Counted from the stretch's first letter, positions 2,271-37,000 are shown. The stretch is 64,000 nucleotides of DNA from Macrostomum lignano (GCA_002269645.1 NIVC01001398.1:62001-126000), one strand, 5' to 3'. Numbers and translations are program-made. The notes: generated by a model not told the origin, from the sequence alone.

Positions 2271-5504
<3,234 letters not shown>

Positions 5505-7172: not shown

Positions 7173-7279
7173 CTGCAGGACGTTCAGCAACCCCCCCCCC
7201 CACCTAAATAGCCAGCTGCTTCCGTGGCAAAATGGCATAAGTTTTTTTGGCGGTTGACTTCTTTCAAAAAATCGTTTTT

Positions 7280-7967
7280 GAGACGATTCTCCAGGTGGAT
7301 TTGAAGCAATTCTCCAATAGTATTGGGACGATTCTCCAGGTGGATTTGAAGCAATTCTCCAATAGTATTGGGACGATTCTCCAGGTGGATTTGAAGCAAT
7401 TCTCCAATAGTATTGGGACGATTCTCCAGGTGATTTTGGGGCGATTCTCTAAGTGGATGTGGGGCGATTCTCCACGTGATTTTGGGGCGATTTTCCTAGT
7501 GGATTTGGCAATTCTCCACGTGATTTTGGGGCGATTTTCCTAGTGGATTTGGGGCAACTCTCCACGTGATTTTGGGGCGATTTTCCTAGTGGATTTGGGG
7601 TGATTCTCTAGGTCATTTTGGGGCGATTCTCCAGGTGGCATTCGGGACGATTCTCCAAGTGGTTTCGGGGCGATTCTCGAGGTGGATTTGGGGCGATTAT
7701 CCAGGTAGATTTGGGGCGATTCTCCAGATGGATTTGGGGCGATTCTCCAAGTGGTTTCGGGACGATTCTCCAGGTGGATTTGGGGCGATTCTCCAAGTGG
7801 ATTTGGGTCAATTCTCCAGGTGGATTTGGGACGATTCTCTAGGTGGATTTGGGGCGATTCTCCAAGTGGTTTCGGGACGATTCTCCAGGTGGATTTGGGG
7901 CGATTCTCCAGGTGGATTTGGGGCGATTCTCCAGGTGGATTTGGGGCGATTCTACAGGTGGATTTGG
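7280..7967. repeat. 23-bp minisatellite (GGTGGATTTGGGGCGATTCTCCA), interrupted by the copia element; resumes at 13244-13310
   Basis: Tandem units on both sides of the LTR element. Confidence 0.97.
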
Positions 7968-11100: not shown

Positions 11101-12124
11101 AGAACGCTCACCACCAGGGAGTCTCGTGACGATGTCCACTCGTCCAGTTCCGTAAGCTTGAACTGTTCGCCCGTCTCCGAGCCCTACATTTTCCGGTTCA
11201 TCGAATTCAGTGTAGTCTTTTAGAGCATTCCTTTGACAGGTCATATGTCTTGTCGCACCAGAGTCAATTATCCACCGTGCAGTTGTGTCCTGAGGACCAG
11301 TTTCTTCAGAGGTAAGAAATGTAGCGGCACTATCGGCTATCTCGTTGTCCAGGTTCGGATTCGAATGACTCGTACTTTCTGCGGTTTTAGCTTTATGCAG
11401 AGTCGATTTTGAGTTTTGCTGCCTGTTGCTCACGTTGAACCTGCACTCTCTACTGAAGTGTCCTTCCTTGCCGCATGTGCAGCACTTAATTGGTCTGCGT
11501 CCCTTAAATTTGTCAACACGAAGAGCAGATTCCGAATCACGGGATTCGTATTTCATAGTTTCACTTCGTTTCATTTCTTCATTAAGCAGTGCTTGTTGAA
11601 CCGTCAGCAAAGTCAGCTCCTCTTCCTTTCGGGTCTCCAGAGCCGTAACCAGACGACTGTAGCTGTCAGGTAGACTGCTAAGAAGAATCACAACCTGGTC
11701 TTCGTCAGACACAGCAGCATTAATGGACGCCAGCTTGTCAGTTAACTCCTTCAGACAGCGAAATGTGCTCCTGAACTGGAGTCCCATCAGTCATCTGCAG
11801 TCTAAATAGTTTTTTCTTCAAAAACAACTTGTTGGCAGTCGAGTCACGTTCGAAATGACCACATAAAATTTGCCACATCTGCCTCGGATCATCATCGCAT
11901 GTAGTCACAAGGTAGATGTACTCACTGCTGAGAGACAGAACTATCATTGCTGCTGCTCGCTGTTGCTGTTCCTTGAATTCATTGTGTCGTGCTTCATTTG
12001 CGTCTTGCTGAAGAACATCTTCTCCGGTAGCTATGCCCCAGAGTCTTCTTGCGATTAAGCAATGTTTCATTTGGATTTTCCACGTCATCCAATTGTCCTT
12101 CGTGAGCTTCTCTATGTGCCCCAT
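8199..12124 (-). pseudogene. copia gag-pol polyprotein with a frameshift near 11760, an in-frame TGA at 9682 (expected Trp) and a frameshifting deletion near 8430
   Basis: Gag (KLTKDNWMTWKIQMK), CCHC knuckle CCTCGKEGHFSREC, protease WIIDSGATRHM, pre-integrase LWHQRLGH..CEAC, integrase HSDICGP/FIDDFSR/TDGGGEY/AERMNRTL, RT QMDVVTAFLNG and YVDD, RNase H YSDADWA/EAEY/DNQGAI. Confidence 0.97.
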
Positions 12125-13740: not shown

Positions 13741-14030
13741 GGAGCCTGTCACTAGCTGGTCAGAGCGTCGAACTCACGACTGAAAGGTCGGGGGTTCGAT
13801 TCTCGACCCACTCGGAACAATTTGTGTCCTTGAGTTTAGACACTTAACTCTGCTTTGCATTGCTTCAGTTCTAAAATGGGTGCCAGCATTAGCTGGGGTA
13901 AAATTGGTGTGTGTGGCGACCCCCCAGTCCTTGGACTGAACAGCCGTACGCAGCCTTCAGATGCGCCGCGCAATAGCTGCGGCTGAGCCATCGGTTGTCA
14001 ATAAGGCAGGTGTAATCGTTATTTTTTTTT
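13741..14030 (+). mobile_element. tRNA-derived SINE, copy 1
   Basis: A-box-like TAGCTGGTCAGAGCG, B-box GGTTCGATTCT, central GTGTCCTTGAG..GACACTTAACTCT..AAATGGGTGCCAGC, T-rich tail; high similarity to 58347-58655. Confidence 0.88.
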
Positions 14031-15917: not shown

Positions 15918-16610
15918 GGATTTGGGGCGATTCTCTAGGTGGATTTGGGGCGATTCTCTAGGTGGATTTGGGGCGATTCTCTAGGTGGATTTGGGGCGAT
16001 TCTCTAGGTGGATTTGGGGCGATTCTCAGGTTGGATTTGGGGCGATTCTCTAGGTGGATTTGGGGCGATTCTCCAGGTGGATTTGGGGCGATTCTCTAGG
16101 TGGATTTGGGGCGATTCTCTAGGTGGATTTGGGGCGATTCTCAGGTTGGATTTGAGGCGATTATCCAGGTGGATTTGAGCGATTCTCCAGGTGGATTTGA
16201 GCGATTCTCCAGGTGGATTTGGGCGATTCTCCAGGTGGATTTGGGCGATTCTCCAGGTGGATTTGGGCGATTCTCCAGGTGGATTTGGGCGATTCTCCAG
16301 GTGGATTTTGGCGATTCTCCAGGTGGATTTGGGGCGATTCTCCAGGTGGATTTGGGGCGATTCTCCAGGTGGATTTGGGGCGATTCTCTAGGTGGATTTG
16401 GGGCGATTCTCCAGGTGGATTTAAGGCGATTCTCTAGGTGGATTTGGGGCGATTCTCCAGGTGGATTTGGGGCGATTCTCTAGGTGGATTTGGGGCGATT
16501 CTCCAGGTAGATTTGGGGCGATTCTAAAAGTGGTTTTGGGGCGATTTTCTAGGTGGATTTGGGGCAATTCTCTAGGTGGCTTTGGGGAAATTCCCCAGGT
16601 GGTTTTGGGA
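15918..16610. repeat. 23-bp minisatellite (GGTGGATTTGGGGCGATTCTCCA/TA), second array of the same family
   Basis: Same unit and orientation as 7280-7967. Confidence 0.97.
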
Positions 16611-18179: not shown

Positions 18180-21162
18180 TCAGTTCGTAAAGATTTCAAT
18201 GTAGCGAGTGCCTGCATCGGAGTTGCGAAGGGGCTAAGTTGTTAGGGGCCGTGAAAGTTTGAGATATTGAATAAAACATTTCAGTTTTTTGGAAGGCTTT
18301 ACATGATGCTTAGGGCGTTTGGGGATAATTAATGGGGATCTAGGGGATTTGAGGATAATTCATGGGGATCTAGGGGATTTGGGGATAATTCATGGGGATC
18401 TAGGGGATTTGGGGATAATTCATGGGGATCTAGGGCATTTGGGAATAATTCATGGGGATCTAGAGCATTTGGGGATAATTGGATCTAGAGCATTTGGAGA
18501 TAATTCATGGGGATCTAGAGCATGTGGGGATAATTCCTGGGGATCTAGGGCATTTGGGAATAATTCATGGGGATCTAGGGAATTCGGGGATAATTCATTG
18601 GAGATCTAGAGCATGTGAGGATAATTTATGGAGATTAAGGGCATTTGGGAATAATTTATGGGGATCTAGGGGATTTGGGAATAATAATTTATGGGATTCG
18701 TGGGAATATAATAGTGGGGATTTAGCTACATGGGGATAAATCATGTGGATCTAAGACACTTGGAAGAATTATGATTAGAAAATTGAGGATAAGTAAAAAG
18801 ATATTAACCAGACACCATGAGCCGCAACTCACCGATAACTTTGCCATTGTACTCGGCAGCCTGGCGGACCTCATCAGCTGACTGAAAGAAAGCATCGGCC
18901 TCGCCGGAGCTCCGACCGCCGGGGTCGCGCCCGATCTGCACCCGGGTGGGCCGCAGCGGCGCGAAGAAGTCGTAGATTTCGGCCTCGCCGGCCGACCAGG
19001 GTAGGCCGCGCAGGTGGACGCGGAAGCCGTCGCCAACGCCCGGGCCGACGCCGCCGCGGTAGCCGCCGGGCTGGTGCATCGGCTGGTGCATCAGCTGGGG
19101 CGGCCCGCCCACGCCAGCTCCGCGCCCGCCGCCGCCGCCGCCGGCCCTGTGCAGGAACAGGTCGACATAGCGGCTGCCCAGGTGCTGCTTGTTCTTTTCC
19201 ATCGCCCGGCGACAGTCGGCTTCCGAATCAAAATCGACGTCGGCCTCGCCGCTTGGCCGGCCGTCCGGGTTGAAGCGAATCTCCACGTGGGCGGCGGTGA
19301 GCGGGGCAAAGAACTGCCGGATGTCCGATTCGCTGGCCGAGTACGGCAGGCCACGCATGTGCACCCAGTAACCCGTGGTCGACGCCCAATCGCTGCCAGG
19401 CGGCCCGCCGCCGCCGCCGCCGCCAAAGTCGCGGCGCATCCCGCCCGGGCCGCCGCCACCGTAGGGACTCGGCCTTGCGCCGCCGTAGCCGCCGGGGCCA
19501 CCGCGGCCGCCGCGCATCGAGCCGCCGCCACTGGCCATAGCGCCAGAATAGTCGCCCATCTGAGGCCCGTAGTCGTAATCGTAGCCGTAGCCACCGCCGT
19601 AGGGTGGCGGCACCGCTGCGCCTCCGGCCGCGTACGGATCGCCTGTGAGAGTGCGATGGGACAAGCAAAAGATGGAGTCTCACTATGAGATAACAGTCCC
19701 GAAATCTCACTATTAGATAACAGTCCCGAAATTTCACAATGAGATAACAGTCCCGACATCTCACTATGAGATAACAGTCCCGACATCTCACTATGAGATA
19801 ACAGTCCCGACATCTCACTATGAGATAACAGTACCGAAATCTCACTATTAGATAACAGTCCCGAAATTTCACAATGAGATAACAGTCCAGAAATCTCACT
19901 ATGAGATAACAGTCCCGAAATTTCACAATGAGATAACAGTCCCGAAATCTCACTATGAGATAACAGTCCCGAAATCTCACTGAGATAACAGTCCCGAAAT
20001 CTCACTTTTAGATAAAAGTCCCGAAATCTCACTATGAGATAACAGTCCCGAAATCTCACTTTGAGATAAGTCTTGAAATTTCAGGTAGCAGGTAGCACAG
20101 GTACAATACGAAAGCATGCCACGGTACAAGTAGCCAGAAAGTCTTCAACGAGTCGCCTAAGAGTCAATTTGAGGCGTTTTATAATATTGTCGGCGACTCT
20201 GGGGCAGTAAAGTCGTATCTGAGGCATACTAGAGTCGCTGTATAGTCAGAGTTGCGTCTAAAGCCCATCTGCTGTATGAATTAGAATCGCATCTCGCAAT
20301 AATAAAAACTCTGTTTAGTCTACTTAAGTTAGTAGAAAGTTAAGCGCTGACTCAAAAGTCGCCTCTCCGTCGCATTTGGGTCGTTAAAAGCTACAAGTGT
20401 CGCTCAAGAGTCGATAGAGTCACTAGTGGGGACAGTGGGGAAGGGCGGGGGGATATTCTAGGCACATCAAATGCGAACAAACGCCTCACCTCCGGACGCC
20501 ATCATCTGCTGCCTATTAGCCTCAGCGTACGCCTCAGCCATAGAGCTGGGGAACAGCTCAATGTAGCGGCTGCCCATATTCTGCCGGTTGCAGCTGCTCA
20601 AAGCACTGCTGGCAGTCTCCGGGGTGTCGAACTGCACGTAGGCCTCGCCGCTAGGCCTGCCGTCCTGGTTGTACACCATCAGGATGCCGTCCTTCACCAC
20701 GTGAAAGCCGTGAAAGAACTCTCTGATGCCGTCGAAATCCGCGGCAAACGGCAGGCCGCGCATCCGCAGCACCGGCTCCCGGTTGTGCCCGCCGTAGGCG
20801 CCGCCGCCGCCGCTGCTGTTCGCTGGCCGGCCAGTGGGTCCGGGGACTCCGGCGCCAGGGACCATGCGAGCTAGCTCGGCCTCGCTGGATTGAAACAGCT
20901 CCACATAGCGCCTGCCCATGTGCTGCTTGTCGTGCCTCATAGCCGCAGCGGCGTCGTCGGGTGTTTCAAAGACGACATAGGCCTCGCCGCTGGGCCGGCC
21001 AAGGTGGTCCTGGGTCAGGTGCACACCCTGCTGGCCCCGGCTGATGCTGCAGTCGTCAAAGAATTTCACAACATCGCTAGCCGTGGATTCGAATGGCAGG
21101 CCGCGCATTCGAACTACACAGGACGGCCCGCCGGACGAATTGTTGGAATTGTTATAGCGCAT
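18180..21162 (-). CDS. HNRNPH: hnRNP F/H (Glorund-like) RNA-binding protein with four qRRMs, 504 aa; exons 21162-20490, 19642-18833, 18211-18180
   Basis: Four RGLP[FYW]..GEA..RY[VI][ED][LI]F modules plus Gly/Tyr-rich linkers. Phase-1 junctions are consistent. The 32-bp last exon (tgcag|GC ACT CGC TAC ATT GAA ATC TTT ACG AAC TGA) completes qRRM4 as GTRYIEIFTN*. Total 1515 nt. Confidence 0.93.
18320..18770. repeat. ~30-bp minisatellite (GGGGATCTAGGGCATTTGGGGATAATTCAT) in hnRNP intron 2
   Basis: Direct reading. Confidence 0.95.
19678..20065. repeat. 27-bp minisatellite (CTCACTATGAGATAACAGTCCCGAAAT) in hnRNP intron 1
   Basis: About 14 tandem units. Confidence 0.96.
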
Positions 21163-22109
21163 GGCTCTGGGGATCTGCTGGCTGAAGTATTTTGTAAGTT
21201 TTTCTATGTACAACTCTTATTTTCAAATACAAAGTTATGTACTTATTATTTCGAAAATGGTTATTGCACTTTATATCTCTAACCTTAAGCTTGCTTAAGC
21301 ATTGTAATTAAATGCTCTAATTTTAATCTTCTGCAATTTAAATAAGTTTTATACAGAAATCATATATCAACAGATAAATGAAAAGTCCTTTTAAAAGAGT
21401 TTATCAAAGAGTCGAACCTACTATGTATCTATGCTATAATGCATAAAAGGTGAAGGTTCCAACTTATAATATAAGTAACCATTTATGGGATGTATACTTT
21501 AAAGAATAGTCTAGTTATTAAGGAAAATTAATTGTTAACTAATCATTTTTAAAAGTAAATAAACAATTCAGTTATTGGTAAAAGTGTTGGCATTAAAACA
21601 AAAAAATCTTAACTTATTAAATTTCTTTGAGTTGACTAAAAGTTAATTAGAATATGCTAATCTATTATCAATAACACAGAATATACAGAAACTTAGCACT
21701 TTCATTTACAAAAACAAACTTTAAAATGCATTGTCTGCATTTTCATTCTTTTGGCTAGCACAGAGAGGTCATTGAAGTAATTTACAATTTATTAAGTAAC
21801 ACATACTAAGAAAAAATATAAATTTGTAATATAACTTATCAAACATATTTTTGTTCTTTCTTGTCTTTGGTCTCATTGACATTTCCATTATCATAAATCA
21901 TACATGCGCAACTGCTGGCCGACCTGGCCGATCCGGCCACCGTAAATCGTGGCTGACCAGGGGTAAGTCGCAAAATTGAGTCAACCAAAAACAGAAAAAC
22001 ACAAGAACCAAGAAAGGCAAGAGGAAAGCGAAAGAAAGAGCAGTTCAGGGAAAATGGTGAAGCAAAAGAAAAACAATTCGCAAAAGAAGCAAACTAAGTT
22101 GTAAAAATA

Positions 22110-23050: not shown

Positions 23051-25099
23051 AGCAAAAATATGTGCATATTTTCTTACTTCAAAGTAGAGGGAATAGAAGA
23101 TTAGAGATAAGCAAACAGAGGGGAGGCGAGCGATGCGATGGGAGAAAAGATAGAAGAGGAGAGAAAAGCTGAGGGAGGAAAAAGAGATGAGAGAGAAGAG
23201 GAGATTAGAGGAAAGAGGAAAGAAAAGATGATGGATGAGATCAGAAGAGAGGAAAGAGGAAAGAGGAGAGAGTAGATGAGAGAAGAGAGGATAAAGAGGA
23301 GATGAGAGGAGAGTGAAGAGAGGAGAGATGAGAGAGTAGAAAAGAGAGATAAGATGAGAGAGTAGAGTGGAGAGAGACGAGAGGGAAGATAAGATGAGAG
23401 AGTAGAGTGGAATGGAGAGACGAGAGGAGATAAGAATGTAGAGAGGAGACAGAAGAGATAGGAGAGGAGAGGAAAGAGAGTAGAGAGGAGAGGAAAGAGA
23501 GGAGAGAGGAGAGGAAAGAGAGAAGGGATAAGGGATGAGAGAGAAAAGAAAAAGAGGATGAGAAGATTGAGGAATGAAGAGAATTTGCAAAGGCCTCAAA
23601 TCTTAGTTTAACATGCATTACTCCAATCTTTGCCTTTTTCCTAACTGTTAACAAGTTTTTGTTTGAGCATGACTTCAAATTTAGAATCTATGCAAAAATA
23701 GTTCCGGGAATTAGAATTCAGTGGTTTAAAAATCTGTGGGTTTTCACAGCTTGTATCTCTACTGGATTCGTATTCTGCATCTGATGAGCCATCTGAATCA
23801 GGGCTCTCATCTTCCATGCCAAATCGTCTAGCAAATCGTTCTTGAGCTATAGGTCACACTGTATTCACTTCACTTACTTCTGGACATTCATGAATCATGA
23901 CTTTTGTAGTATGCTCACTACACTGTACTGACAATTTACTAATTGCTTCATGCCGCCACTAGATGACACTGATTAGCTGTTATAAAAACGCGGAATCTGC
24001 ACGCAGCACTAATTAGCTGGTGAGGCATTTAGCTTTAAAAATATAGTCATAGTTACTCCTGCCGTTTACCTAAAGTTTTTGCTTGGCTCTTTCATAGGTA
24101 AGTCGCATTTTTTATCGAAAACTAAGTCGCACGGCCAGCGTAATTTCAGAAGTTGCGCATGTATGATCATAAATGATGAATTTGTTGTTAATTCACAAAT
24201 TATTAATGCAAATTCATTAATCAACAAAAAATCTTAATGACATTTCATTAATGTTAATGAAAATCTAAATTCTTATTAATGGATTGTTACCCAATACTGC
24301 TACCTAGATTGTTATAATATGGTCATGGTTAGGTTAATCATATTATTAGTTGTTTTATATTATAGAGTATGCTATCATAGGATTAGGTTTAGAATTTTAG
24401 TATAGTTATATTTTTTAGAGGATATGTTATAATTCATTATGATATATACAAGTATGATAATTATACAAGTTTTGTAAATAGTTATACAAGTTATTTTAGC
24501 CGAGCTATTTATTATTCATTAAAATAAAAAAGACATTTTTATGAAAAAGTATTTGAGTATAATAAAATAAATAATGCTTTAGATATTTATGATAAAAAAT
24601 ATTGCAAAGTATTTATTTTAGATTATAGTCTACTTTTTTGACATCTAATTATAATTTATAATTTATATACTGAAAATCAACCCTATGATTGGAATAAATT
24701 CTGAAAATGTGTGGATGCCTATCAAGGGTCTAGCAAAAATGCACCAAAAGGTCACTCTAAAGTATATAGACTATATCAATGGATCACCAAGCAGTGGTGG
24801 CACACCAAAAAATAGCATTGTTATGCAGAGCACACCTAATAACTTTGCCAACTTTTGACATTTTGACATTTAGGCCATTCTGACATGGATTCCAAGCACT
24901 ATGCAAGTACCAAGTGTCGCACTGCACTATACCATACTGCACTAAGTGCTACCTTACAGAAAATACGCCACATCTTAGGGTCATTTTAAAAATGTCTAGA
25001 TAGCTATCTGCCATTTAGAAACTTTTTTAATAAGGAAAAGCAAACTAGGATAAGGGCTTCCAAAATGCCAAATTACTAAAAAACATAGGCAGTGAAAAG

Positions 25100-25590
25100 T
25101 TTAGATCCCCTAATATATCCCCTAGACTAAGTCTATCTTTGATTAGGACATTAAAATTTCTAAATTAACAAAGTTTAATAATACAATGTTCTAATAAATA
25201 CAACTTGAGCATACAATGCACTTTGTGACTTTCCAACTACATGTAAAGTCAATCACTATCTATATTTTATTTATCTAAATGATCTAACTATGTACAAACA
25301 TAATTAAAAACACCTAGGCACAAATGAAGACAAAGTTCTATAGCTAGCATGGCATTAGGCCTAGTGATGACCTTTTTGACTTTCATTTCAGCAAGTTCCT
25401 CTAGTAGTGATATCAATTTTACCCAAAGAAATGCTTTGACAATTTCCTATATTAGGTGACCCATTACTATGATATATAGGGTCTAATGCTATTTTTAAGG
25501 CTATAAAACTTTAATTAATAAACTTGTTTCTGTTTGTTTGTTAAAAATCTAGTTTCAAAATAATTTAATGTAGAAAACTAAGACATTGCC
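25100..25590 (+). pseudogene. Hypermutated Merlin (IS1595/IS1016-like) transposase C-terminal remnant with 3' TIR
   Basis: Reads TNIIKNT*AQMKTKFYS*HGI[RP]SDDLFDFHFSKFL***..CFDNFLY*VTHYY, homologous to 29337-29806; TIR-like end ..AACTAAGACATTGCC at 25590. Confidence 0.72.
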
Positions 25591-26389
25591 ACTTTAGTAA
25601 GCCTATTAATTAGTAGATATAAGGTCATTTTGTCTGCTGTTAGGCCTAGTTTGTCTGCTAGCAGACAAAATGACTACTCATTAGTAGGTACATTTATTGT
25701 TTGTTTAGCATGCTGCATGATATTATATAACATTAATATTGATTTATTACAGTTATTCTTTCTCCTATTTTTTCACTGTGAACTCTTATTTTGACTTATA
25801 TGCTAATACTATAAAAAACTATATGAACTTCAAACTTTGTGTGAAATTTCTACCGAAACATACATTCGTTTTAATAAAAGTAGCACTAAATAGTAAAAAA
25901 TAGATGCTTATTAGCAGCAAATATTTTATTGTACACAACACAATAGACAAAAATCTACCTTAGCAATGCTTTGATAGAATGATTAGGCCTACTCTTAATT
26001 TTCAAGTTAAAAAATTCAATTTATAATTATAGAAACTTTAAATGCATAGGCCCAATCTAGGCAAAAAGCATAACATCTAACTACATGCCTATAGCAACTC
26101 ATACTCATTCATGTCAATTATCAAGTCAAGTTACAAATTAGGCCTAATTTAATTGCATTCAATATTCTAAAATTTTCCTAAATCAAACTTAATTAACCTG
26201 TTTTTATGCAGGTCCTTTTTCCTAAGAGCAAAAAACTTCTTCCAAATAGTTGAACCATCATTGCTTCTATGTTGCACCTATTTTTTTTATTAATCTTTAG
26301 CTTTTTTGTTCTCATTTGGCAAGGACCAAGAAGTCAATGACCAGCAACCAGGTTCAAGTTAAGAATAAGATGTTATACCTTATATATTA

Positions 26390-27428
26390 CGAGGGGTGTC
26401 CCAAAAGTTCCCGGAATGTCTAACGTAGCTCTTCAACGGAGCCATGATGTTTCACGCCCTTGGTGTCAAATGAAAGGAAGTTTTGTCACGAAGAAAATGA
26501 AGTTAAAAGCATGTTGATATCTGTTTTTATTCAGGAGCTGCAGCAAGAAACGTGCGCAAAGGTCAAGGGTACTGTTACACAACCTCACATATCACTGAAA
26601 ATAATTTTTCATCTTCGTTTTTAGATATTTTCATTTTGAATTCGTGCTACTAACGTCTCAGAAAGACGTGGTAGTGTCTATGGAAAAAAGCAGAAATGCT
26701 CATTAAGCTAATCTGAGCTTTTGCACGAGTGCAGATAATTCTTACCAAGCGCTTGCTTTCAACTTGAAATCTCTTTGCCAAATTGGGTTCTCTTCAGAGC
26801 CTCGAAAGTCAGCGAAGTCAAGTTTTTGTCCTTTGGTCAATAGGATGGAGTGGGGCCAAGATTTCTGACCACTTATTCTCCATCCATGGTAAGAAAAGCC
26901 TGAAAAAACTGCCATTTACGAATGGATCGAACGCTTTAGAGACGGTCCAGAAAATTCGTAGCCGGTGTTCCAGAACCGCAGTGAACTTGAAGGCTTCACT
27001 CGTCGCGTCATCCTGCATCATGAAATGCCTCGAACTGTTTTTGCCCAGGCCATCGACGGCATGCTTTCAAAGTGGCAGAGGTGTATTCAGCAGAATGGGG
27101 ACTACATGGAGAAGCCGCAGGCTGAGCTTGACGATTCGCTTTGAATTTTGAATCGGTGCATGTCCCAAGGATTCATCAATGGTATGAAATGTTCTGTGTT
27201 TTATTGTTTAAAATCATTGCCATAGATTTTTGAGGTTGTGTAACAGTACCCCTGACCTTTGCGCACGTTTCTTGCTGCAGCTCCTGAATAAAAACAGATA
27301 TCAACATGCTTTTAACTTCATTTTCTTCGTGACAAAACTTCCTTTCATTTGACACCAAGGGCGTGAAACATCATGGCTCCGTTGAAGAGCTACGTTAGAC
27401 ATTCCGGGAACTTTTGGGACACCCCTCG
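26390..27428 (+). mobile_element. Internally deleted mariner element (irritans-like termini) with 198-bp TIRs
   Basis: TA TSD; TIRs 26390-26587 and 27231-27428 with 1 mismatch, starting CGAGGGGTGTCCCAAAAGTT; HTH remnant (SQRSQVFVLWSIG..AIYEWIERFRDG) and C-terminal KWQRCIQQNGDYME; no DDD core. Confidence 0.93.
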
Positions 27429-28418
27429 TATATCTATTTACTAAAAATTATAGACTATAAGCTATTGAAACTCACAGATTTTGAACCCAGGGATTCCAAT
27501 CCCTGGAACTATTTTTGCATATATTCTAAAATCTGAGGCCATACTTAAACAAAAACTTGATAATACTTAGTTTAGTAGGATAGAGGTAAACATAAAATGG
27601 AATACAATTACATAAAATTAGGATTTGAGGCAAGCAGTTGATCTTGTTAGTTGGGGTGCTACACAGTTGGGCAATGTTTATCTAACTTTAAAACATGTAT
27701 TGGCAAACTGTGGCCTCTGCCTCTTCTTTTTCTGACTTGGCAAGTAAAATAAAAAGAAATTCAAAAATCAACATGTGGTTTTTTTGACGCATTTTGCATA
27801 CCAAGGTACATTATCAAGTATATTGTTAGAAACAAAAGGTATGACTATGACTAAGTGAATTTATAAATTTTGGATTTTTATATCCCTTGGATCTTTTGAA
27901 ACTTCTATTTTCTCTTCTGTTTCCTCTTTTCTTTCTTTTGTCTTTTTTTCCTATCTTTTTTCTCTCTAGGCCTACTCTCTCCCTGTTCCACTTTCATCTC
28001 TTGTCTGTTCACTCAAGTCCCTGCTCTCATCTTCCCTCTTTCATCTGTCATCTTTATTGTTTTATATGTTCTATTACCTCTCACCTCTATACTTCTTTTT
28101 TCCCCTCTTTTGACTCTTCACTTTCCTTTTTATTTTATTTTCTTTTCCATTTTCTATAGGCCCTATTCTCTCTCTTATTTCCTCTATTCTCTCTCTACTC
28201 TTTTCCTTTATCTTTTATCTTTCATTTCTCATCTTTCCTTACACCTTTTTAGTTTATAGCCTAGAGAATGAAGTCAATGAAAAATTGTGCATTTTGAGCA
28301 GAAATTTTAAGGTAGCCTATGAGTATGACATTTTCTATAGTTAATTTAAGGTGGGTGCAAAATTTGGTGTAATATGGTTGAGCCATGTGGGAGTCCATAG
28401 CAAAGTAATTTGTATACA

Positions 28419-28421
<3 letters not shown>

Positions 28422-28456
<35 letters not shown>
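28422..28456. repeat. (CA)n microsatellite
   Basis: Direct reading. Confidence 0.97.
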
Positions 28457-28457
<1 letters not shown>

Positions 28458-29336
28458 CATTTATTTGCAGCAACCAGGTTCAAGTAGGCCTAAGAATAAG
28501 ATATTATACCTTTATTTATACATTATATATTATATATAGACTATACCCTATCCCTATAGTCAATGATAGACATAGTAATTAATTTTAAATATCATTTATT
28601 TGTTAATTGCAATTCAGCTAGCTAAAAGCCAAAGTAGCCAAAATTGGATCCAGTATTATCTGAGCAGTTGAAAAAAGTAGGGCCTACTGATTCACTGATT
28701 TATCATTAGGGCCTAGTGCACTGTAAATGTAAATCAACTAAGTAAATGAAGGCCTATGCAACAAAAGTAACATTTTTCCTTCACAAAAACGCAAATGGCT
28801 GCGTCTTACTAATAGTAAGTTCTAACATTAACAGTAACAGCCATATAACTTCTTTGTAATCTATTGTTTGCGTTTATAAAAGTTTTATCTAGTCTCAGCG
28901 ACGATATATAAATTACAAATCGACGAATTAACAAACCCGTTACCCAAATTTGCACTTTTCCAAGACTTATCTGTGAATTTTTTAGACTTATTAATTATTG
29001 CATTAGCCATTTCTGAATTTGAGTCACCTAGCAGTGATATAAATTTTGTAGTTATTATAATTACTTTTTTAAGTTTTGTTTAAATTACAAAAAAATTCAA
29101 CGAAATGGATCTCCTAATTTAAATCCAACAAACAGCAAATTCTTCCTCGAAAGGCAAATTTTTCTTGCATGAGCAGAAGAGTGACTACAGAAGTCCCTTA
29201 AAAGTTCTATGGCATTGTTTCTATCATTTAAATGTTATAAAAAACAAAATCAAATCGTCATTTAAATACAGACGACGTAGACACAGCTTTTCTAAATTAG
29301 TTTTTGCAATTTATTAATTAATATATTTGATGTATG

Positions 29337-29806
29337 GGCATTGTCCTAGTTACCCGCGTTAAATTATTATTTTGACCCAAAATTTGAAACGAACAAACAA
29401 AACAAAAGCAAGTTTATTCAAGATTTTAAATGAGTCTTAGGTATTAAAAGGAGTAGTACACGGCGTAGTAATGTGTCAGCCAGTACAGAAAGTTGCCGAA
29501 GCTCTTTTTGGGTAGGCCTAGGCCCTTAGAGTCAGCGCCAGAGAAAATTGCTAAAGTGAGAGTCAAAAAGGTCGTCATTGGTGCCATGCTGACTACAAAA
29601 CTTCACCTTCACGTGGGCCCAGGTGCCTTCAATGGTGTTCTCAATGACTGATTCCAAGGTCACAGAGGTCAGCCAATGGCTGAATGGCCGCAAATTGGCA
29701 GGAGGTAGGATATTTACAGGCGCTCGAGGTTGTCCCGCCATGATTTACACTGAAAATAAAGAAGATTGGGTCAAAATAATTTAATGGGGGAAAGTAGGAA
29801 CTTGCC
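29337..29806 (-). mobile_element. Internally deleted Merlin-family DNA transposon (470 bp)
   Basis: Imperfect ~44-bp TIRs starting GGCA; 8-bp TSD GATGTATG/AATGTATG; ORF from 29741 fuses an N-terminus to the Merlin-type C-terminal motif NTIEGTWAHVKVKFCSQHGTNDDLFDSHFSNFLWR. Confidence 0.8.
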
Positions 29807-30216
29807 AATGTATGTATGCCTATGTATCCTATATAGATCTGGACCTAGGATTCTAGATGGACATTGATTAATTCAATTAAATGTTTTATTTTTTGTAAAA
29901 TAGAAACTGATTTTTCTGCTATTAACTTAACAATTAATAAACATTTGCTGGTTTAAGTAGAAAGATACCAATATAGCATAAAACATTTAATTTATATATA
30001 ATTATATAGCAATATGCCTATATGCTATATCTTATAAATTATTGAACTAAGGATAGTGAATAAGGTGTAAGTAGGAATTAAAGCTTAGCCATAATCTTTT
30101 TATTGAATTTCTGTAATATTATATTTTTAAAACTTTGATATTATTATATTAGGCCATTAGGGGCCTACTTTTCAATATATAATATCAATGATCCCACGAC
30201 TTCCAGTATTATATTT

Positions 30217-30455
30217 GGCGCATGACTAAGACTACCATACACTAAGACTACCACAGCTATTACTGGCTACTAGTATTGAGGGGGAACTACCAATCTTCTA
30301 GCATTGCTATTCTTTTCATAGGTTCTTTTCTTGCTCCTGGCTCTCCTACCCACTAATCTCCTCTCTAGCACCATCTAATAACATATAAATTCAAATTTCT
30401 CCATTAGTTCCCCAAGTGTGGCGGTTTTGGTGTGTGGCAGTCTTGGTCCTACACC
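30217..30455. mobile_element. MITE with 40-bp imperfect TIRs and 8-bp TSD
   Basis: 30217-30256 is the reverse complement of 30416-30455 at 29 of 40 positions; flanks TTATATTT and TTATATTC. Confidence 0.7.
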
Positions 30456-33400
30456 TTATATTCTGCATATAAAAAAGAAAATTTAACAAAAAGTTGATTT
30501 TTTTGCAAATAAACATTGCATTAAACATTGCAAAATAATTACAAAAGATAAAAAAAATCTTTAACAAAAAAATTTGGCCTTAACTATATTAAATAAATAG
30601 CAAAACATCTTTTGTAAGCCTTACTAACAATGTATTAGTTAGTTTCTAGCATTAAATTATTTTGACATTAATTTTTAACAAATAAACCAAAACAAGTTTA
30701 TTAAAGCATACTTAAGATATATATAATCAATATTAATAAGTCTTTAAACTGTAGAGATCTTAAAAAAGCAACATTAAATAATATAGTGATAAATGATAGG
30801 TCATTTTGGTCATCTAATATCAAAAGTTGCCAAAGTATTTCTATAGGTAGAGTTGGCACTAGGGTCTATAAGAATTTTTGCTAAGATAAAGTGTGCTCTT
30901 TTTAAGTTGCCATTGATCTTTGTATGCAGAGTGATCTGACTAGTAGATGTCAGGGGTCTCGCTGCTCCAAGAAGATAGGCCCTTATGTGTAGACAATCTA
31001 GTTGCAGATGAATGACTAGCGTAGCTCTCTAAACTTGCAAGCTACAGCTGCATTGCATAGTCAGTTGTACTAGTTGTTAATATTTGCTAAAAATGCAATG
31101 TAGAATCCACATGAATTTTCCATGTAGAATTAATATCAAATTTGTCACAGCAATTACATGTGGAATCTATGTAGAAAATCCATCTGGAATTGATATTGAA
31201 TTTGTCCTAGTGATTCCATGTGGAGACCATATAGACTTTTCTACCTGAAATCAGGCTTCATTTTGCAGATTGAGCTGAATGCTATCCAGGTATGCCTAAA
31301 TGTTTAATTCAAAATAAGCTTTAAATTGAAGTCAACTATCTTGATCTTTACATTAGAAAATGATGCTAGCCAAGTCTGTATATATTGAAATGTAAGATAA
31401 GTAGCAGCCTTAAATTAATTTAAATCATTTGTGATACAAAATACATTTAGGGTGTTTTAAAATTAAAATATAATATACAATACAATATAAAAGATCTTCA
31501 AGGCACTCAATAAAGGCCAACATTTCTGGGTCTTAGTTGTGTAGTTCCTTCCATTTTCGTTGGACTTCTCCTAGAGCATGCAGTCTAACAGACGATTGAC
31601 ATAGGCTTTTATGTGCTTCAGTAGTCTCACTTTCAAGTATGCGCAGTGAACAGATCTAAAAAATACCAAATGCAATATTAGGAAAATTATTGCAAGATAC
31701 TTAAGATTAACTTCAAGTTTGATTGTTGCATTTGTTAGCATATTTAAATTAATAGGCAAATATATAATTGAACATAATTAAATAGGCCAAAATGTGTGTA
31801 ACAGGGGTGTTTCCTGTACACTGAGAATCCCACTGCTGAGACACCAAAAGCTGTAACAGGGGGGGATTCTTCCTTCTTAATAATATCCCACTGCTGGTAC
31901 CAAAAGCTGTCCCAGGGCTCTTAATTATTCTCTTTCTAGTCTTACTTGCTGCTACTAAGTTGTCAAAGTGGTGTTCCTGTACAATACAAAATCCCACCAA
32001 TTAGCCACCAAGCTGTTACAGGGCTAATTTACTAATCTCTTAAGTGTTCTTCTTAGGTTGGTAGCTGCCACCAAGATTATTCTATTAATAAATTATGAGT
32101 TTATCAATATTAGAATAATCTGAGAAAAGTTTCTTAGAATAGGTCTGATTATTTAGTCTGAGTATTATTCTTAGAAAAACTGTTAGCCCTGAAAGATTTT
32201 ACTCTTCTGATTATTCTGGTAGCGTTCTATTTAATAATAACCTAAGCAGTATTTTGGCTTACTGGTATATGTATTTCATGTACTTTGCAAGTCCTTGGGC
32301 GTTACCGAGATCAGAGGGTCACAGCCTCCGTTATTCTTACACGTATTACTTCAGATCTACTTCACAACTTCTTACTACTCAACACTTTCCTTCTCAGTAG
32401 TATATATGGTACACACTTCCATCTACTTCACTCTTTCTTAAAAAAAGGAATTAACACAGAAAACACTTCTTCAATTCTTATTTTCTCGGAACTCTTACTA
32501 TTCGTTATCAATTGCTTATTGTGGAACCGCAATGCGCAAGGTTGGTCTCTCCTCTGCCAAAAACGCTTCTATTTATACTAAAATTTGCTACAGTTTTAAA
32601 CAAAAATTCGTTAGTGCAAAATTTTATAGAAAATACAAGTATTAAAACAAAATATGTTTCTTAGTTTTGGCGTGAATTCAAATTGACTAAACGGGAGGGG
32701 CCCTGCACATGTGCATTTGCCAGATGTGCTAAAAGCCATGGCTTTTTTACTTGAACAAGGCCTATTTCTTATTTAGTTTTAGATCTTAGGCTAATAAACT
32801 GCAATGAAAAAGAAATAAAAATCATATACCATATAAATATTCCTTATAAAAAAACATACAAATATCTAAAAACTAATTTACACAATAAAAATTTAGAAAA
32901 AGTGCAATACCTAGGCTAGTCTTCATATTTGGCAAATCTTCTATTACAAGTTGCAATTTTGAATTTTCACTTTAAGAAAAATTATTAAATTTATATAGTC
33001 TACTTTTAAATGAAATTTAAGATAATTCTTATTGCTATGACTCATTAGCAAAATTATAAAAAAATAATTTTGCAATAGGCCTATGTCCTTGTTTTATTGA
33101 ATTACAGGCCTACACTTAGGGTAAAGACAGAGTAAAAAATAGAATAAACTTGGGAAAAGATGCAATTTAATGAGACAAAGCAAGAATGGATAAGCATGTA
33201 TTTTTTAAGAGTCATTCATCAATTTTATAAATCACTTATTAAATGTAACTTTGTTTGACGTTACATAGCTAGCTATAGCAGAAGATTCTTGTAGGGCATG
33301 CTAGGCCTACAAACAAATAACTGAAGGCCTAATGATAGATTAGTAAGGACAATTGACTTATCATTTGAATAAATATAATGATTTAAGATTTAAGTATTAC

Positions 33401-34097
33401 AAAGTTTATATATCAAAGAATGAGATTTTTGTCCACATTTAATATTTGTCCACAATAAGATAACAATTAAGGACCCTGAAACCAACTTTTGATTCAAGTA
33501 CTTACAAGGAAAGACACATAACACACATGTTAACAAAAATTTTATTCACATCCTTCACCTTAAATAGAAAATAAAAAAACAATAAAACTCCAAGTGTCAT
33601 CCAAGATTCTTGATGCTACCAAGAATTGCTTTAGTATGGTAGCCCACTCTGTCCAATGCTTGCTGATAGTGTGGGGGTCTGCACTGATGCTGAATAGTAA
33701 CTAAAAAGAAAAAAACAAACAACAAACAAATTTAATAGGTTGAAGGTAGAATTGTACAGTTGTAATAAATCATCAGAAACTAACTCTGTATATCCTATGA
33801 ATCGAATCACATTCACAGTGACTACTATGACTGATGCAATGACTAACTAAAACGAATTAATAATTTTTTAATTTCTAGAGTCTGATATAATTATTAACTT
33901 CAAAAGAAATAAAATTATGGGAAAATGTTTCTTTAGCTTAAAAGTTACAAATTTTACAAGTTGCAAGTGAGATAAGTGAGCAATGAACTTTGGAAAATGC
34001 AGGGGTTAACAATTCAACTGTCGCAAATGCCATTCTGCAGGCCAAAGTGCAGACCCATGTTGCCAATGGCGGCATCAAACTGGCCTCGCAGACAGCC

Positions 34098-37000
34098 ATG
34101 ACTGCCCCGGCCACATCGTTGCCTGCCTCTGCCGCTGCGGACAGCTGGGGCAGCGCCGCCCGGGAGGCCACGGTCTCTGCCGCGGCGCCAGACGGCTGCC
34201 TGCAGCTCAGCCTGACTGGCGGGGCCGAAAATGGCCAGCTGTGCGCATTGGCCGACATCCGACCGGACCAGTGCGTCTTCTGGCAGGGCCGGGCCGAGTC
34301 TGGCGACATCCTGCTAGAGGTTCAAGGCCACCGGGTCAGCGGGTTCACTCTGCGCGACGCTCGCGAACTTCTCGCCGCCCTGTCTGCCAACGGCGCGCCT
34401 GTGGTGCTGAAGACGCTGCCAGCAGGCCGACTGTCGCCGGATCTAGCCAGGCTGCTGCGCTCGCAGTTCGATGCTGGCAGCCCCGAAGCCGCACTGCAGT
34501 CGGTGGTGCGCGACAACCTGTACCTGCGCACCGTGCCGGTGACCACCCGGGCCAGGCGGGAGAATGAAATCGACGGCGTCGACTACGCTTTTATTGGGGC
34601 CGACGAGTTCGACCGGCTGGAGCGGGCCGGCCGGCTGCTTGAGAGCGGCGTGTTCGAGGGCAATCGCTACGGCACGCCGCGGCCGGCGCCCGAGGCTACC
34701 GGCCTGTTCCGCCGCACTGCCGACGGCGGCGTCGCTGCTGACTCGGCGGCGTCGGCATCGACGAGCAAAGCGGGCTCGCCGAGCCGCAAAGTCAACGCCG
34801 TGCAACCGCAGCCGAGGTCGGAGACGCTGCCAACTGGCAAGGCGGCCAGTCCGGAGGCTGCAGCTGCCGATGCCGCATCAACGGATGAGTCGCCTCTGCC
34901 TGCTGGTTGGGAGCGAGTTGTGGATCCCAAATATGGCGTGTTCTATATTGAGTGAGTTCAGGGGAGGGGGTGGATAGCTTTTGATCAGGGTGTAATTATT
35001 GTGTTGGGGACTGGATATACTAAACTGATTGGGGACTTGGTGACTGGATATACTATACTAAATAGCGGAGAATGTGCTGGATAGCGGAGAATATCTGGAA
35101 AGCAGAGAATGAGCTGGAAAGCAGAGAATGTGCTGGAAAGCGGAGAATATACTAAATAGCGGAGAATATGCTGGATAGCGGAGAATGTGCTGGATAGCGG
35201 AGAATATCTGGAAAGCAGAGAATGAGCTGGAAAGCAGAGAATGTGCTGGAAAGCGGAGAATATACTAAATAGCGGAGAATATGCTGGATAGCGGAGAATG
35301 TGCTGGATAGCGGAGAATGTGCTGGATAGCGGAGAATTTACTGGAAAGCGGAGAATGTGCTGGATAGCGGAGAATGTGCTGGATAGCGGAGAATGTGCTG
35401 GATAGCGGAGAATGTGCTGGATAGCGGAGAATGTGCTGGATAGCGGAGAATGTGCTGGATAGCGGAGAATATGCTGGATAGCGGAGAATATGCTGGATAG
35501 CGGAGAATGTGCTGGATAGCGGAGAATGTGCTGGATAGCGGAGAATATGCTGGATAGCGGAGAATGTGCTGGATAGCGGAGAATGTGCTGGATAGCGGAG
35601 AATGTGCTGGATAGCGGAGAATGTGCTGGATAGCGGAGAATGTGCTGGATAGCGGAGAATATGCTGGATAGCGGAGAATGTGCTGGATAGCGGAGAATGT
35701 GCTGGATAGCGGAGAATATGCTGGATAGCGGAGAATGTGCTGGATAGCGGAGAATGTGCTGGATAGCGGAGAATGTGCTGGATAGCGGAGAATGTGCTGG
35801 ATAGCGGAGAATGTGCTGGATAGCGGAGAATGTGCTGGATAGCGGAGAATGTGCTGGATAGCGGAGAATATGCTGGATAGCGGAGAATGTGCTGGATAGC
35901 GGAGAATGTGCTGGATAGCGGAGAATATGCTGGATAGCGGAGAATGTGCTGGATAGCGGAGAATGTGCTGGATAGCGGAGAATTTACTGGAAAGCGGAGA
36001 ATGTGCTGGATAGCGGAGAATGTGCTGAATAGCAAAGTATGTACTGGATAGCCTAGAATTTACTGGAAAGCAGAGAATGTGCTGGATAGCGGAGAATGTG
36101 CTGGATAGCGGAGAATGTGCTGGATAGCGGAGAATGTGCTGGATAGCGGAGAATTTACTGGAAAGCGGAGAATGTGCTGGATAGCGGAGAATGTGCTGGA
36201 TAGCGGAGAATGTGCTGGATAGCGGAGAATATGCTGGATAGCGGAGAATGTGCTGGATAGCGGAGAATGTGCTGGATAGCGGAGAATGTGCTGGATAGCG
36301 GAGAATGTGCTGGATAGCGGAGAATGTGCTGGATAGCGGAGAATGTGCTGGATAGCGGAGAATGTGCTGGATAGCGGAGAATATGCTGGATAGCGGAGAA
36401 TGTGCTGGATAGCGGAGAATGTGCTGGATAGCGGAGAATATGCTGGATAGCGGAGAATGTGCTGGATAGCGGAGAATATGCTGGATAGCGGAGAATGTGC
36501 TGGATAGCGGAGAATGTGCTGGATAGCGGAGAATGTGCTGGATAGCGGAGAATGTGCTGGATAGCGGAGAATGTGCTGGATAGCGGAGAATGTGCTGGAT
36601 AGCGGAGAATGTGCTGGATAGCGGAGAATATGCTGGATAGCGGAGAATGTGCTGGATAGCGGAGAATGTGCTGGATAGCGGAGAATATGCTGGATAGCGG
36701 AGAATGTGCTGGATAGCGGAGAATGTGCTGGATAGCGGAGAATGTGCTGGATAGCGGAGAATGTGCTGGATAGTGGAGATTGTGCTGGTTAAGCTAGATC
36801 GTAGATATCGGAGCTTCTAAGAATTTTAATATTTACGAAAGATCGCTCTGAGCAAAAACGTTTCTTTATTTTTGAAAGCACTGTATTGTGCACCTGAAAT
36901 CCAGTGCTAAGGAAATTGCTATTTACTTTGTTGCGACACCATTGCAAAGTGTCCATAATTTAGTTCGCTCGCTATCTATTTACACCGTGGCGGTATTTTG

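What the first reader, a model, noticed from the sequence alone, without database searches (positions are those of the whole stretch)
25366..33309. Dense TA-GGCC-TA octamers are insertions at TA sites: candidate excision footprints of an unidentified GG...CC-ended transposon
Seen: exact TAGGCCTA at 25366, 25641, 25984, 26139, 28485, 29513, 33076 and 33302. That is 8 copies in about 8 kb, against a rough expectation below 0.1 at about 30% GC, and I spotted none by eye elsewhere in the window. Variants: TAGGGCCTA (28678, 28707), TAGGCCCTA (28157), TAGGGGCCTA (30158), TAGGGTCTA (25477, 30860). In-window paralogues supply empty sites. The Merlin frame GGC ATT AGG CCT AGT GAT carries a 6-bp insertion at a TA relative to GGC ACC AAT GAC. 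The repeat CAAGT-TAAGAATAAG (about 26355) reads CAAG-TAGGCCTA-AGAATAAG at 28481. The 29513 copy also sits in extra sequence relative to the other Merlin. Established: TA-targeting transposons leave a duplicated TA plus a few terminal bases on excision. Inference: this block records many insertion-excision cycles of an element with GG(G)...(C)CC ends, giving a footprint-based record of past transposition.
Basis: partly seen in the sequence, partly recalled or inferred. Interest (0 to 1): 0.8.

Follow-up and report, generated by a model that had tools for sequence, protein, structure and literature searches.

The report
Repeated TAGGCCTA scars in junk DNA
A 10-kb AT-rich stretch of decayed transposon debris upstream of an animal MAGI gene carries 13 small GGCC insertions, each flanked by TA on both sides. 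They look like scars left by a cut-and-paste transposon that jumped in and out many times, but that transposon is not in the window and could not be identified.

Summary
Exact TAGGCCTA occurs 9 times, not 8: the first copy is at 25356, not 25366, and 27967 was missed. There are also 4 length variants of the form TA-G(2-4)C(2-3)-TA. All 13 lie at 25.3-33.3 kb, inside an AT-rich (32% GC), CpG-depleted block, and none lie elsewhere. About 0.15 exact copies are expected in the block. TAGGCCTA is the most over-represented 8-mer there.

The flanks are unrelated. Wherever a comparison is possible the motif is extra DNA inside otherwise colinear sequence:
- +6 bp at 25356, shown to be derived by a paralogue and 7 distant Merlin-like transposases.
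- +8 bp at 29513 against two paralogues.
- +5 bp at 28485.

These results exclude a point-mutation origin at those sites. The best reading is repair scars, made of a TA duplication plus terminal GGCC, left by a TA-targeting cut-and-paste element. This is the chemistry of Tc1/mariner footprints.

- No TA|GG...CC|TA element is in the window.
- The TAGGGTCTA "variants" do not behave like insertions.
- The strong clustering and the uniformity of the scars remain unexplained.
- No sequence from the same genome could be retrieved.

Interest is moderate.

The parts
25356..25363 (.). TAGGCCTA inside Merlin-like fragment c1. It is a derived in-frame 6-bp insertion that reads HG-I-RP-SDD.
   Evidence: Paralogue c2 and 7 distant Merlin-like transposases all lack the two codons.
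25641..25648 (.). TAGGCCTA within 21 extra bases (25639-25659) at the central TA of a perfect 15+15 palindrome (25624-25638 / 25660-25674). The extra DNA includes a 10-nt copy of the left flank, TTTGTCTGCT.
   Evidence: This is the only site with a flanking direct repeat longer than TA. It looks like filler-type break repair (inference).
25984..25991 (.). TAGGCCTA; no paralogue is available.
26139..26146 (.). TAGGCCTA; no paralogue is available.
27967..27974 (.). TAGGCCTA inside a C/T-rich low-complexity tract (27887-28240).
   Evidence: The 354-nt tract has only 18 G and three GG dinucleotides. Two of the three GG are in this motif and the one at 28157.
28157..28165 (.). TAGGCCCTA variant in the same C/T-rich tract.
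28485..28492 (.). TAGGCCTA in repeat copy B (28468-28560). Copy B has 5 extra bases compared with copy A (26342-26387), which reads CAAGTTAAGAA.
28678..28686 (.). TAGGGCCTA variant.
28707..28715 (.). TAGGGCCTA variant, 29 bp from the previous one.
29513..29524 (.). TAGGCCTAGGCC (tandem GGCCTA-GGCCTA on the minus strand) inside Merlin-like fragment c2. It has 8 extra bases compared with both c1 and c3.
30150..30167 (.). TAGGCC-AT-TAGGGGCCTA: a half site followed by a 10-nt variant.
33076..33083 (.). TAGGCCTA. A half site, CAGGCCTA, lies 29 bp downstream (33105-33112).
33302..33309 (.). TAGGCCTA. A half site, AAGGCCTA, lies 22 bp downstream (33324-33331).
28735..28756 (-). Half site AAGGCCTA. 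The sequence next to it (read on the minus strand: GGCCTTCATTTACTTAGTTG) resembles that at 33310-33331 (GGCCTTCAGTTATTTGTTTG). This may be a remnant end of the donor element.
   Evidence: The match is 12/16, with permutation P about 0.02. Suggestive only.
23600..33990 (.). AT-rich (32% GC), CpG-depleted block of transposon debris between an hnRNP F/H-like gene and the MAGI exon. It holds every motif copy.
   Evidence: CpG observed/expected is 0.31 (mariner excluded) against 0.69 for the rest of the window. The block has 1057 TA dinucleotides and the rest has 2690.
25297..25626 (+). Merlin-like 3' fragment c1 (heavily C>T decayed). It serves as the host of the 25356 site and as a comparator.
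29309..29847 (-). Merlin-like fragment c2. It contains the 69-aa transposase C-terminus ORF (29532-29741) and inverted arms at 29334-29368 / 29775-29809.
30576..30960 (-). Merlin-like fragment c3. Its apparent terminus is ...TTAAGGCC (GGCC at 30576-30579).
26388..27430 (.). Young non-autonomous Tc1/mariner-like element with 221-bp inverted repeats and CGAGGGG...CCCCTCG ends flanked by TA. It is not the donor. It shows that TA-targeting elements were active in the block.
   Evidence: Its empty paralogous site is 28468-28560.

Best explanation
The octamers are break-repair scars left when copies of a TA-targeting cut-and-paste DNA transposon, whose ends read 5'-GGCC...GGCC-3' (or GG(G)...(C)CC), excised from this block.

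Proposed steps:
1. Integration duplicates the target TA.
2. Excision cuts the non-transferred strand a few bases inside each end, so terminal bases stay on the flanks as 3' overhangs.
3. End joining then gives TA + GGCC + TA, a net +6 bp.

If the stagger were 4 nt, both overhangs would be the self-complementary GGCC and would ligate cleanly. That would explain why 9 of 13 scars are identical. Occasional fill-in or slippage would give GGGCC, GGCCC and GGGGCC. Resection or filler synthesis would give the +5, +8 and +21 cases.

What is shown: real enrichment, unrelated flanks, derived insertions inside colinear sequence, and TA as the only common flank.

What is inferred: the transposon origin, the ends of the element, the stagger, and repeated cycles.
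For: 1. Enrichment and specificity: 9 exact copies against about 0.15 expected. TAGGCCTA is the top 8-mer, and TA-GGCC-TA is the top TA-NNNN-TA octamer.
2. The flanks of the 13 sites are not alignable with each other, so the motif is not part of one repeat family.
3. Insertion polarity: 25356 is +6 bp compared with paralogue c2 and with 7 distant Merlin-like proteins found by exhaustive HMMER. 29513 is +8 bp compared with two paralogues. 28485 is +5 bp. Two of the three GG dinucleotides in a 354-nt C/T tract lie in the motifs.
4. At all five evaluable sites, both sides continue the same host sequence. The motifs are therefore not junctions between elements.
5. TA is the only shared flank. There is no TWA or TTAA signal, and only 1 of 13 sites has a longer direct repeat. 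Among 33 GGCC, duplicated dinucleotide flanks are TA x9, AA x1 and TT x1.
6. [quoted passage not shown]
7. A TA-flanked mariner-like element sits in the same block.
8. Site 25641 carries a 10-nt templated filler. Fillers are a known by-product of excision repair (PMC4423477).
9. One-mismatch copies exceed chance (10 against 3.2). Their ratio to exact copies implies roughly 9% decay (my estimate from the ratio), which is younger than the host fragments, whose c1/c2 alignment is 65-72% identical.
10. Two half sites share adjacent sequence, possibly remnant element ends (P about 0.02).
Against: - No TA|GG...CC|TA element with inverted ends is in the 64 kb. The resident mariner-like element ends in CGAGG.
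- No described TA-duplicating family known to me has GGCC ends (from memory).
- Natural footprints are usually heterogeneous. In rice, only 8 of 94 excisions were 'perfect' (PMC4423477). Here 9 of 13 are identical.
- All 13 sites lie among 1057 TA dinucleotides, and none among the other 2690. My arithmetic gives (1057/3747)^13, about 7e-8. A genome-wide process limited only by TA availability is not enough.
- The 5-bp and 8-bp cases need extra steps.
- Everything rests on one window. No second sequence from this genome could be retrieved.
Confidence: 0.5

Rival explanations
1. Same donor, different loss mechanism. Short palindromic (hairpin-forming) TA-flanked elements with GG...CC ends were removed by replication slippage or hairpin processing rather than by transposase. 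Only the base of the stem (GG+CC) remained between the two TA copies.
For: The scar is a perfect palindrome. One site sits at the centre of a perfect 30-bp palindrome. No transposase source is present in the window.
Against: Slippage between the two TA repeats would normally restore the empty site. Deletion end points would be expected to vary more than 9 identical of 13. This rival also needs the unseen element.
Confidence: 0.12
2. Not a transposon at all. Recurrent 2-nt staggered breaks at TA are filled in, a few G residues are added to both 3' ends, and the ends are joined blunt. The G addition could be untemplated, by a TdT/Pol mu-like polymerase. It could instead come from telomerase, because TTAGG|CCTAA is a head-to-head junction of the arthropod-type telomere unit. 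The product is TA-G(n)C(m)-TA.
For: The variants differ only in the number of G and C: GGCC, GGGCC, GGCCC, GGGGCC. Six of 13 sites read TTAGG on the left. No donor element was found.
Against: No (TTAGG)n or (TTAGGG)n arrays are in the window. T before TA at 6 of 13 sites is close to background. Nothing known makes TA-staggered breaks in animals apart from transposases. n=m=2 at 9 of 13 sites is too regular for untemplated addition.
Confidence: 0.08
3. Scars or ends of a PIF/Harbinger-type (PHIS) element. The terminal repeats of this group typically start GG(G/C)CC. A lineage of it would here duplicate only TA, or would lose one base of a TWA duplication on repair.
For: The Harbinger terminal-repeat consensus is GG(G/C)CC with a TAA/TTA target (PMC4423477). 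GG starts are typical of PHIS groups (PMC4482050). The variants GGGCC and GGCCC match that consensus. One half-site interior reads GGCCTTGTTCAAG, which resembles Tourist-like ends (from memory).
Against: The flanks show no TWA duplication: left TTA at 6 of 13 and right TAA at 2 of 13, both about background. ISL2EU duplicates AT, not TA. No PHIS transposase or Myb-like gene is in the window. Harbinger excision is often precise (PMC4423477).
Confidence: 0.15
4. TAGGCCTA is a selected protein-binding palindrome, such as a transcription-factor or insulator site. It would be kept in multiple copies in the 12-kb region between two divergently placed genes.
For: The copies cluster upstream of the first MAGI coding exon. 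It is a perfect 8-bp palindrome. Exact copies (9) are about as many as one-mismatch copies (10).
Against: Copies sit inside a decayed transposase reading frame, a C/T low-complexity tract and other repeat debris. They arose as insertions, not by substitution. No conservation data exist.
Confidence: 0.05
5. Chance or a sequencing/assembly artefact.
For: There is only one window, and no raw reads are available.
Against: None of 100 window shuffles and none of 300 block simulations reached the observed count. The sites are confined to one compartment and have biologically sensible TA flanks. Transposon-based sequencing kits would leave other end bases (from memory).
Confidence: 0.02

Closest known systems
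Tc1/mariner (IS630-Tc1-mariner) excision footprints, for example the Sleeping Beauty canonical footprint and Tc1/Tc3 and Minos footprints
   Same: TA target duplication remains on both sides. A few terminal transposon bases are retained between the two TA copies. The net gain is about 5-6 bp. End joining after staggered cleavage leaves 3' overhangs (PMC2874221, PMC12255080).
   Different: Known elements end in CAG/CAGT/CGAG/CCAGG and similar, not GG..CC. No donor was seen here. The scars are far denser (13 in 8 kb) and more uniform than footprints usually reported.
Genome-wide transposon excision scars found by comparing rice species (PMC4423477)
   Same: This is a record of past excisions read from genome sequence. 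Fillers and small deletions accompany the scars, as at 25641, 28485 and 29513.
   Different: In rice the filled state is seen in the sister species, and the scars are heterogeneous (8 of 94 perfect). Here no filled state is available, and 9 of 13 scars are identical.
PIF/Harbinger-ISL2EU (PHIS) superfamily
   Same: Terminal repeats begin GG. For Harbinger the consensus is GG(G/C)CC. Targets are AT-rich (PMC4423477, PMC4482050).
   Different: The duplications are TWA (Harbinger), AT within A|AT|T (ISL2EU), ANT, CWG or TNA, never TA. No such transposase is in the window.
Merlin (IS1016/IS1595-like) elements
   Same: Three decayed Merlin-like fragments lie in the block. Two appear to end in AAGGCC/AAGGTC, that is, GG..CC-type termini.
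   Different: Merlin makes 8-9-bp duplications (stated in PMC4482050). Twelve of 13 octamers have no repeat beyond TA. No other GGCC site matches the Merlin end.

Membership tests
Tc1/mariner-type excision footprint | The scar is flanked on both sides by the duplicated TA target. | tested here: met
   The 13 sites were selected as TA-G(n)C(m)-TA, so the flanks alone prove nothing. Independent support: 16 of 33 GGCC are preceded by TA and 16 of 33 are followed by TA, against about 10% background. At 25356 the gain is exactly GGCC plus one TA (+6).
Tc1/mariner-type excision footprint | The motif is extra DNA relative to the ancestral (empty) site. | tested here: met
   +6 bp (outgroup-polarised), +8 bp (two paralogues) and +5 bp. 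Only 3 sites could be tested by alignment and 2 more by tract composition.
Tc1/mariner-type excision footprint | The scar bases equal the terminal bases of an element family present in the genome. | tested here: not met
   No TA|GG..CC|TA inverted-repeat element is in the 64 kb. The resident mariner-like element ends in CGAGG. This is therefore 'not met in the window', not 'absent from the genome'.
Tc1/mariner-type excision footprint | Filled, scarred and empty states are seen at the same locus in alleles or relatives. | not testable with these tools
   No orthologous or allelic sequence is available.
ISL2EU | 2-bp AT duplication at A|AT|T, with terminal repeats starting GG. | tested here: not met
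   The flanks are TA, not AT. No ATGGCCAT occurs. The family definition is from PMC4482050.
PIF/Harbinger | 3-bp TWA duplication, with terminal repeats starting GG(G/C)CC. | tested here: not met
   The GGCC/GGGCC/GGCCC bases fit the terminal-repeat consensus. However, left TTA occurs at 6 of 13 sites and right TAA at 2 of 13, both about background. The definition is from PMC4423477.
Merlin | 8-9-bp target duplication flanking the element or scar. | tested here: not met
   Only 25641 has a longer (10-nt) flanking repeat. The other 12 sites have none of 8 nt or more.
hAT | 8-bp duplication. TAGG/CAGG-type ends are recalled from memory. | tested here: not met
   There are no 8-bp duplications and no inverted-repeat pairs starting TAGG.
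piggyBac / Kolobok (TTAA targets) | TTAA duplication. | tested here: not met
   Only 26139 reads TTA-GGCC-TAA.

The most novel reading that the evidence does not exclude
The scars are the uniform product of a dedicated, high-frequency process rather than occasional by-products of a selfish element. One possibility is an undescribed TA-specific transposase family that cuts 4 nt inside palindromic GGCC ends, so that every excision self-ligates to TAGGCCTA. If so, the scars would be a countable molecular fossil of each hop. Another possibility is a host-directed break-and-G-addition (telomerase- or TdT-like) process confined to methylated, AT-rich repeat islands.
Probability: 0.12. Interest if true: 0.8.

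Novelty: new member of a known kind. Interest (0 to 1): 0.45.

Why it matters
If the scars are excision footprints, they give a direct count of past cut-and-paste events. Such events usually leave no readable trace. That would allow three things:
- Estimates of excision versus insertion rates.
- Dating of activity relative to the host repeats.
- Discovery of an undescribed TA-duplicating family with GGCC ends, simply by searching for TA|GGCC...GGCC|TA.

The confinement to one CpG-depleted island would also bear on how chromatin or methylation steers DNA-transposon targeting. If the scars prove ordinary, they remain a useful annotation flag: 6-bp GGCC insertions at TA in old repeats of this genome.

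Tried and rejected
**Point-mutation origin.** Rejected at the three alignable sites. The CAGGCCTG-type, RIP-like C>T route I first suspected is included in this rejection.

**Motif as part of one repeat family.** Rejected because the flanks are unrelated.

**Motif as a junction between nested elements.** Rejected because both sides continue the same host sequence.

**Intact donor in the window.** No TAGG...CCTA pair with 14-nt inverted ends (4 or fewer mismatches) lies within 12 kb. The inverted-repeat scan of the block found only the mariner-like element and the Merlin-like fragments.

**Merlin ends as the source.** Copies c1 and c3 seem to end in AAGGTC/AAGGCC. However, no other GGCC site matches that end, and there are no 8-9-bp duplications.

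**ISL2EU, Harbinger, hAT and TTAA families.** The target duplications do not fit.

**Telomere-type arrays.** None found.

**TAGGGTCTA 'variants'.** 25477 shows no indel against c2 and c3. 30860 is ambiguous.

**Getting more of this genome or a relative.**
- MAGI exon search: best hit is a louse protein at 37% identity.
- Exact look-up of the copia ORF: nothing.
- Copia homologues: at most 52% identity.
- Mariner end in metagenome contigs: 0 hits.
- Merlin word search: no candidates.
- Merlin profile in metagenome contigs: one 1.5-kb contig without the motif.

**Other searches.**
- Pfam did not recognise the 69-aa Merlin-like fragment. Exhaustive HMMER did.
- Rfam and tRNA scans of the window found nothing.
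- A literature search for the octamer returned only unrelated uses.

Full report
**Setting**

The window is nuclear DNA of an animal. It carries:
- exons of a two-pore potassium channel (3095-3607);
- an hnRNP F/H-like RRM protein (18804-21213, minus strand);
- a MAGI-type scaffold protein with PDZ, guanylate-kinase and WW domains (from 33990);
- a near-intact copia-type retrotransposon (8365-11787);
- 55 rows of tandem-repeat arrays.

Most of the window is 42-58% GC. The 10.4 kb between about 23.6 and 34.0 kb is 32% GC. It lies between the hnRNP-like gene and the first MAGI coding exon. This block is very rich in TA and strongly CpG-depleted: observed/expected is 0.31, against 0.69 elsewhere. 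It consists of decayed repeat fragments plus one young mariner-like element.

The species could not be identified. The best protein matches were 37% (MAGI exon, a louse) and 52% (copia, unnamed contigs; named hits were an octocoral and a sponge).

**The observation**

Exact TAGGCCTA occurs nine times, all between 25356 and 33309. Four length variants of the form TA-G(2-4)C(2-3)-TA are at 28157, 28678, 28707 and 30158.

The expectation for the block is 0.15-0.16 with a first-order model, and 1.25 with a third-order model that already absorbs part of the motif. No simulation reached nine.

An unbiased ranking gives the same answer:
- TAGGCCTA is the most over-represented 8-mer in the block.
- TAGGCC is the top 6-mer.
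- TA-GGCC-TA is the most frequent of all TA-NNNN-TA octamers, although GGCC is one of the rarer tetramers.

About half of all GGCC in the block have TA on a given side, against roughly 10% background. One-mismatch versions (10) also exceed chance (3.2 ± 1.7).

**What the copies are**

- *Unrelated flanks.* The 40-nt flanks of the 13 sites do not resemble each other. The motif is therefore not carried by one repeat family.
- *Site 25356.* This copy lies in a fragment of a Merlin-like transposase gene. An exhaustive HMMER search with the paralogous 69-aa ORF found 12 relatives. In the protein alignment, the paralogue c2 and seven distant relatives all read HGT-(S/N)D-LF. Copy c1 has two extra codons, AGG CCT. 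This is a derived 6-bp insertion, equal to GGCC plus one extra TA.
- *Site 29513.* Copy c2 has 8 bases that both c1 and c3 lack. The sequence reads as a tandem GGCCTA-GGCCTA.
- *Site 28485.* One copy of a short repeat has 5 bases more than the other.
- *Sites 27967 and 28157.* These lie in a 354-nt C/T tract with only 18 G. Two of its three GG dinucleotides are the motifs.

In all five cases the host sequence continues on both sides, so the motifs are not boundaries between elements.

The TAGGGTCTA strings should be dropped from the set. The one at 25477 aligns to both paralogues without any length change. The one at 30860 is ambiguous.

**What flanks them**

TA is the only common feature. There is no TWA or TTAA pattern. 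Only one site, 25641, has a longer direct repeat. That site is informative in another way. Twenty-one extra bases sit exactly at the central TA of a perfect 30-bp palindrome. They consist of the motif plus a 10-nt copy of the adjacent flank. This is the kind of templated filler described at transposon excision sites in rice (PMC4423477).

**Mechanism**

The form 'duplicated TA, a few constant bases between, net gain about 6 bp' is that of Tc1/mariner excision footprints. The transposase cuts a few bases inside each end. The terminal bases stay on the flanks as 3' overhangs, and end joining leaves them between the two TA copies (PMC2874221; PMC12255080).

For the scar to be GGCC, the element must begin GG(CC) and end (GG)CC. 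I add one inference. That would account for the unusual uniformity, 9 identical of 13. The ±1-2 G/C variants and the +5, +8 and +21 cases would be ordinary repair noise, or repeated use of a scar's own TA.

A rough age follows from the ratio of excess one-mismatch copies to exact copies. It gives about 9% decay (my estimate). That is younger than the Merlin-like fragments, whose c1/c2 alignment is 65-72% identical, and older than the mariner-like element, whose arms are 96% identical.

**What is missing or awkward**

- *No donor.* No TA-flanked element with GG...CC inverted ends is in the window. The resident mariner-like element ends in CGAGG.
- *Harbinger does not fit.* Its ends match the bases (GG(G/C)CC, PMC4423477), but it duplicates TWA, which the flanks do not show.
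- *Merlin does not fit.* The Merlin-like fragments seem to end in AAGGCC/AAGGTC. However, Merlin makes 8-9-bp duplications, and no other GGCC site matches that end.
- *Possible remnant ends.* Two half sites share adjacent sequence (12/16, P about 0.02). Three half sites lie 22-42 bp from a full site with their defective side facing it. These may be remnants of element ends, but the evidence is thin.
- *Clustering.* All 13 sites fall among 1057 TA dinucleotides, and none among the other 2690. My arithmetic gives about 7e-8. Much of the remainder is young tandem arrays, exons and a young copia. Even so, several ordinary AT-rich stretches (1-1000, 13.0-14.3 kb, 21.2-22.1 kb) have none. Age, local hopping, or a preference for the methylated, CpG-depleted state could each explain this. 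None could be tested.
- *Uniformity.* Natural footprints are normally more varied than these (PMC4423477).

**Rivals**

- Loss of palindromic elements by slippage would need the same unseen donor.
- A break-and-G-addition process would explain the G(n)C(m) series, and TTAGG|CCTAA resembles a head-to-head telomere unit. However, there are no telomere-type arrays, and n=m=2 is too regular.
- A selected binding site is hard to reconcile with copies inside a dead reading frame and a C/T tract.
- Chance or artefact is very unlikely on the statistics, but it cannot be excluded without reads.

**Verdict**

The 'excision footprints of a GG...CC-ended transposon' part is the best available explanation (about 0.5, plus about 0.27 for variants that still invoke such an element). 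It lacks its defining proof, the element itself.

The finding is a probable new member of a known kind (transposon excision scars) with two unusual properties, density and uniformity. Interest is moderate. It would rise sharply if the whole genome showed the same scar at scale, or if a new TA-specific family with GGCC ends were found.

Noticed in passing
window 8365-11787 (minus strand): Near-intact copia-type LTR retrotransposon. It has a 701-aa gag-protease-integrase ORF and a 402-aa reverse-transcriptase ORF in different frames. The best database relatives are only about 52% identical (unnamed contigs; named hits were an octocoral and a sponge).
   Followed up: partly
window 26388-27430: Young non-autonomous Tc1/mariner-like element. 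Its terminal inverted repeats are unusually long (221 bp, 96% identical), its ends read CGAGGGGTGTCCC, and it is flanked by TA. A paralogous empty site lies at 28468-28560.
   Followed up: partly
window 23600-34000 versus the rest: CpG depletion is confined to the AT-rich block (observed/expected 0.31 against 0.69). Other AT-rich stretches of the window are not depleted (0.54-0.93). This suggests a sharply bounded island that was methylated in the germline.
   Followed up: partly
whole window, e.g. 7277-7967, 15918-16609, 35062-36788, 51397-53567, 59183-60845: Extraordinary load of minisatellites: 55 Tandem Repeats Finder rows, mostly with 17-46-bp units and up to 115 copies. They fill introns and intergenic DNA. 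Some families recur at distant places (7277-7967 and 15918-16609).
   Followed up: no
window 13752-14030 and 58359-58656: Two copies (80% identical) of a short interspersed repeat whose start looks tRNA-like by eye. ARAGORN calls no tRNA.
   Followed up: no
window 25624-25674: Perfect 15+15-nt palindrome (GTCATTTTGTCTGCT / AGCAGACAAAATGAC), interrupted at its central TA by 21 bases that contain TAGGCCTA and a 10-nt copy of the left arm.
   Followed up: partly
window 25297-25626, 29309-29847, 30576-30960: Three decayed fragments of one Merlin-like (IS1595-type) element family. c1 is heavily C>T/G>A decayed relative to c2. c1 and c3 appear to terminate in AAGGTC/AAGGCC.
   Followed up: partly
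window 29815, 30013, 31291: TATGCCTA occurs three times. It is the same single G>T difference from TAGGCCTA each time. It may be chance or a second scar type.
   Followed up: no
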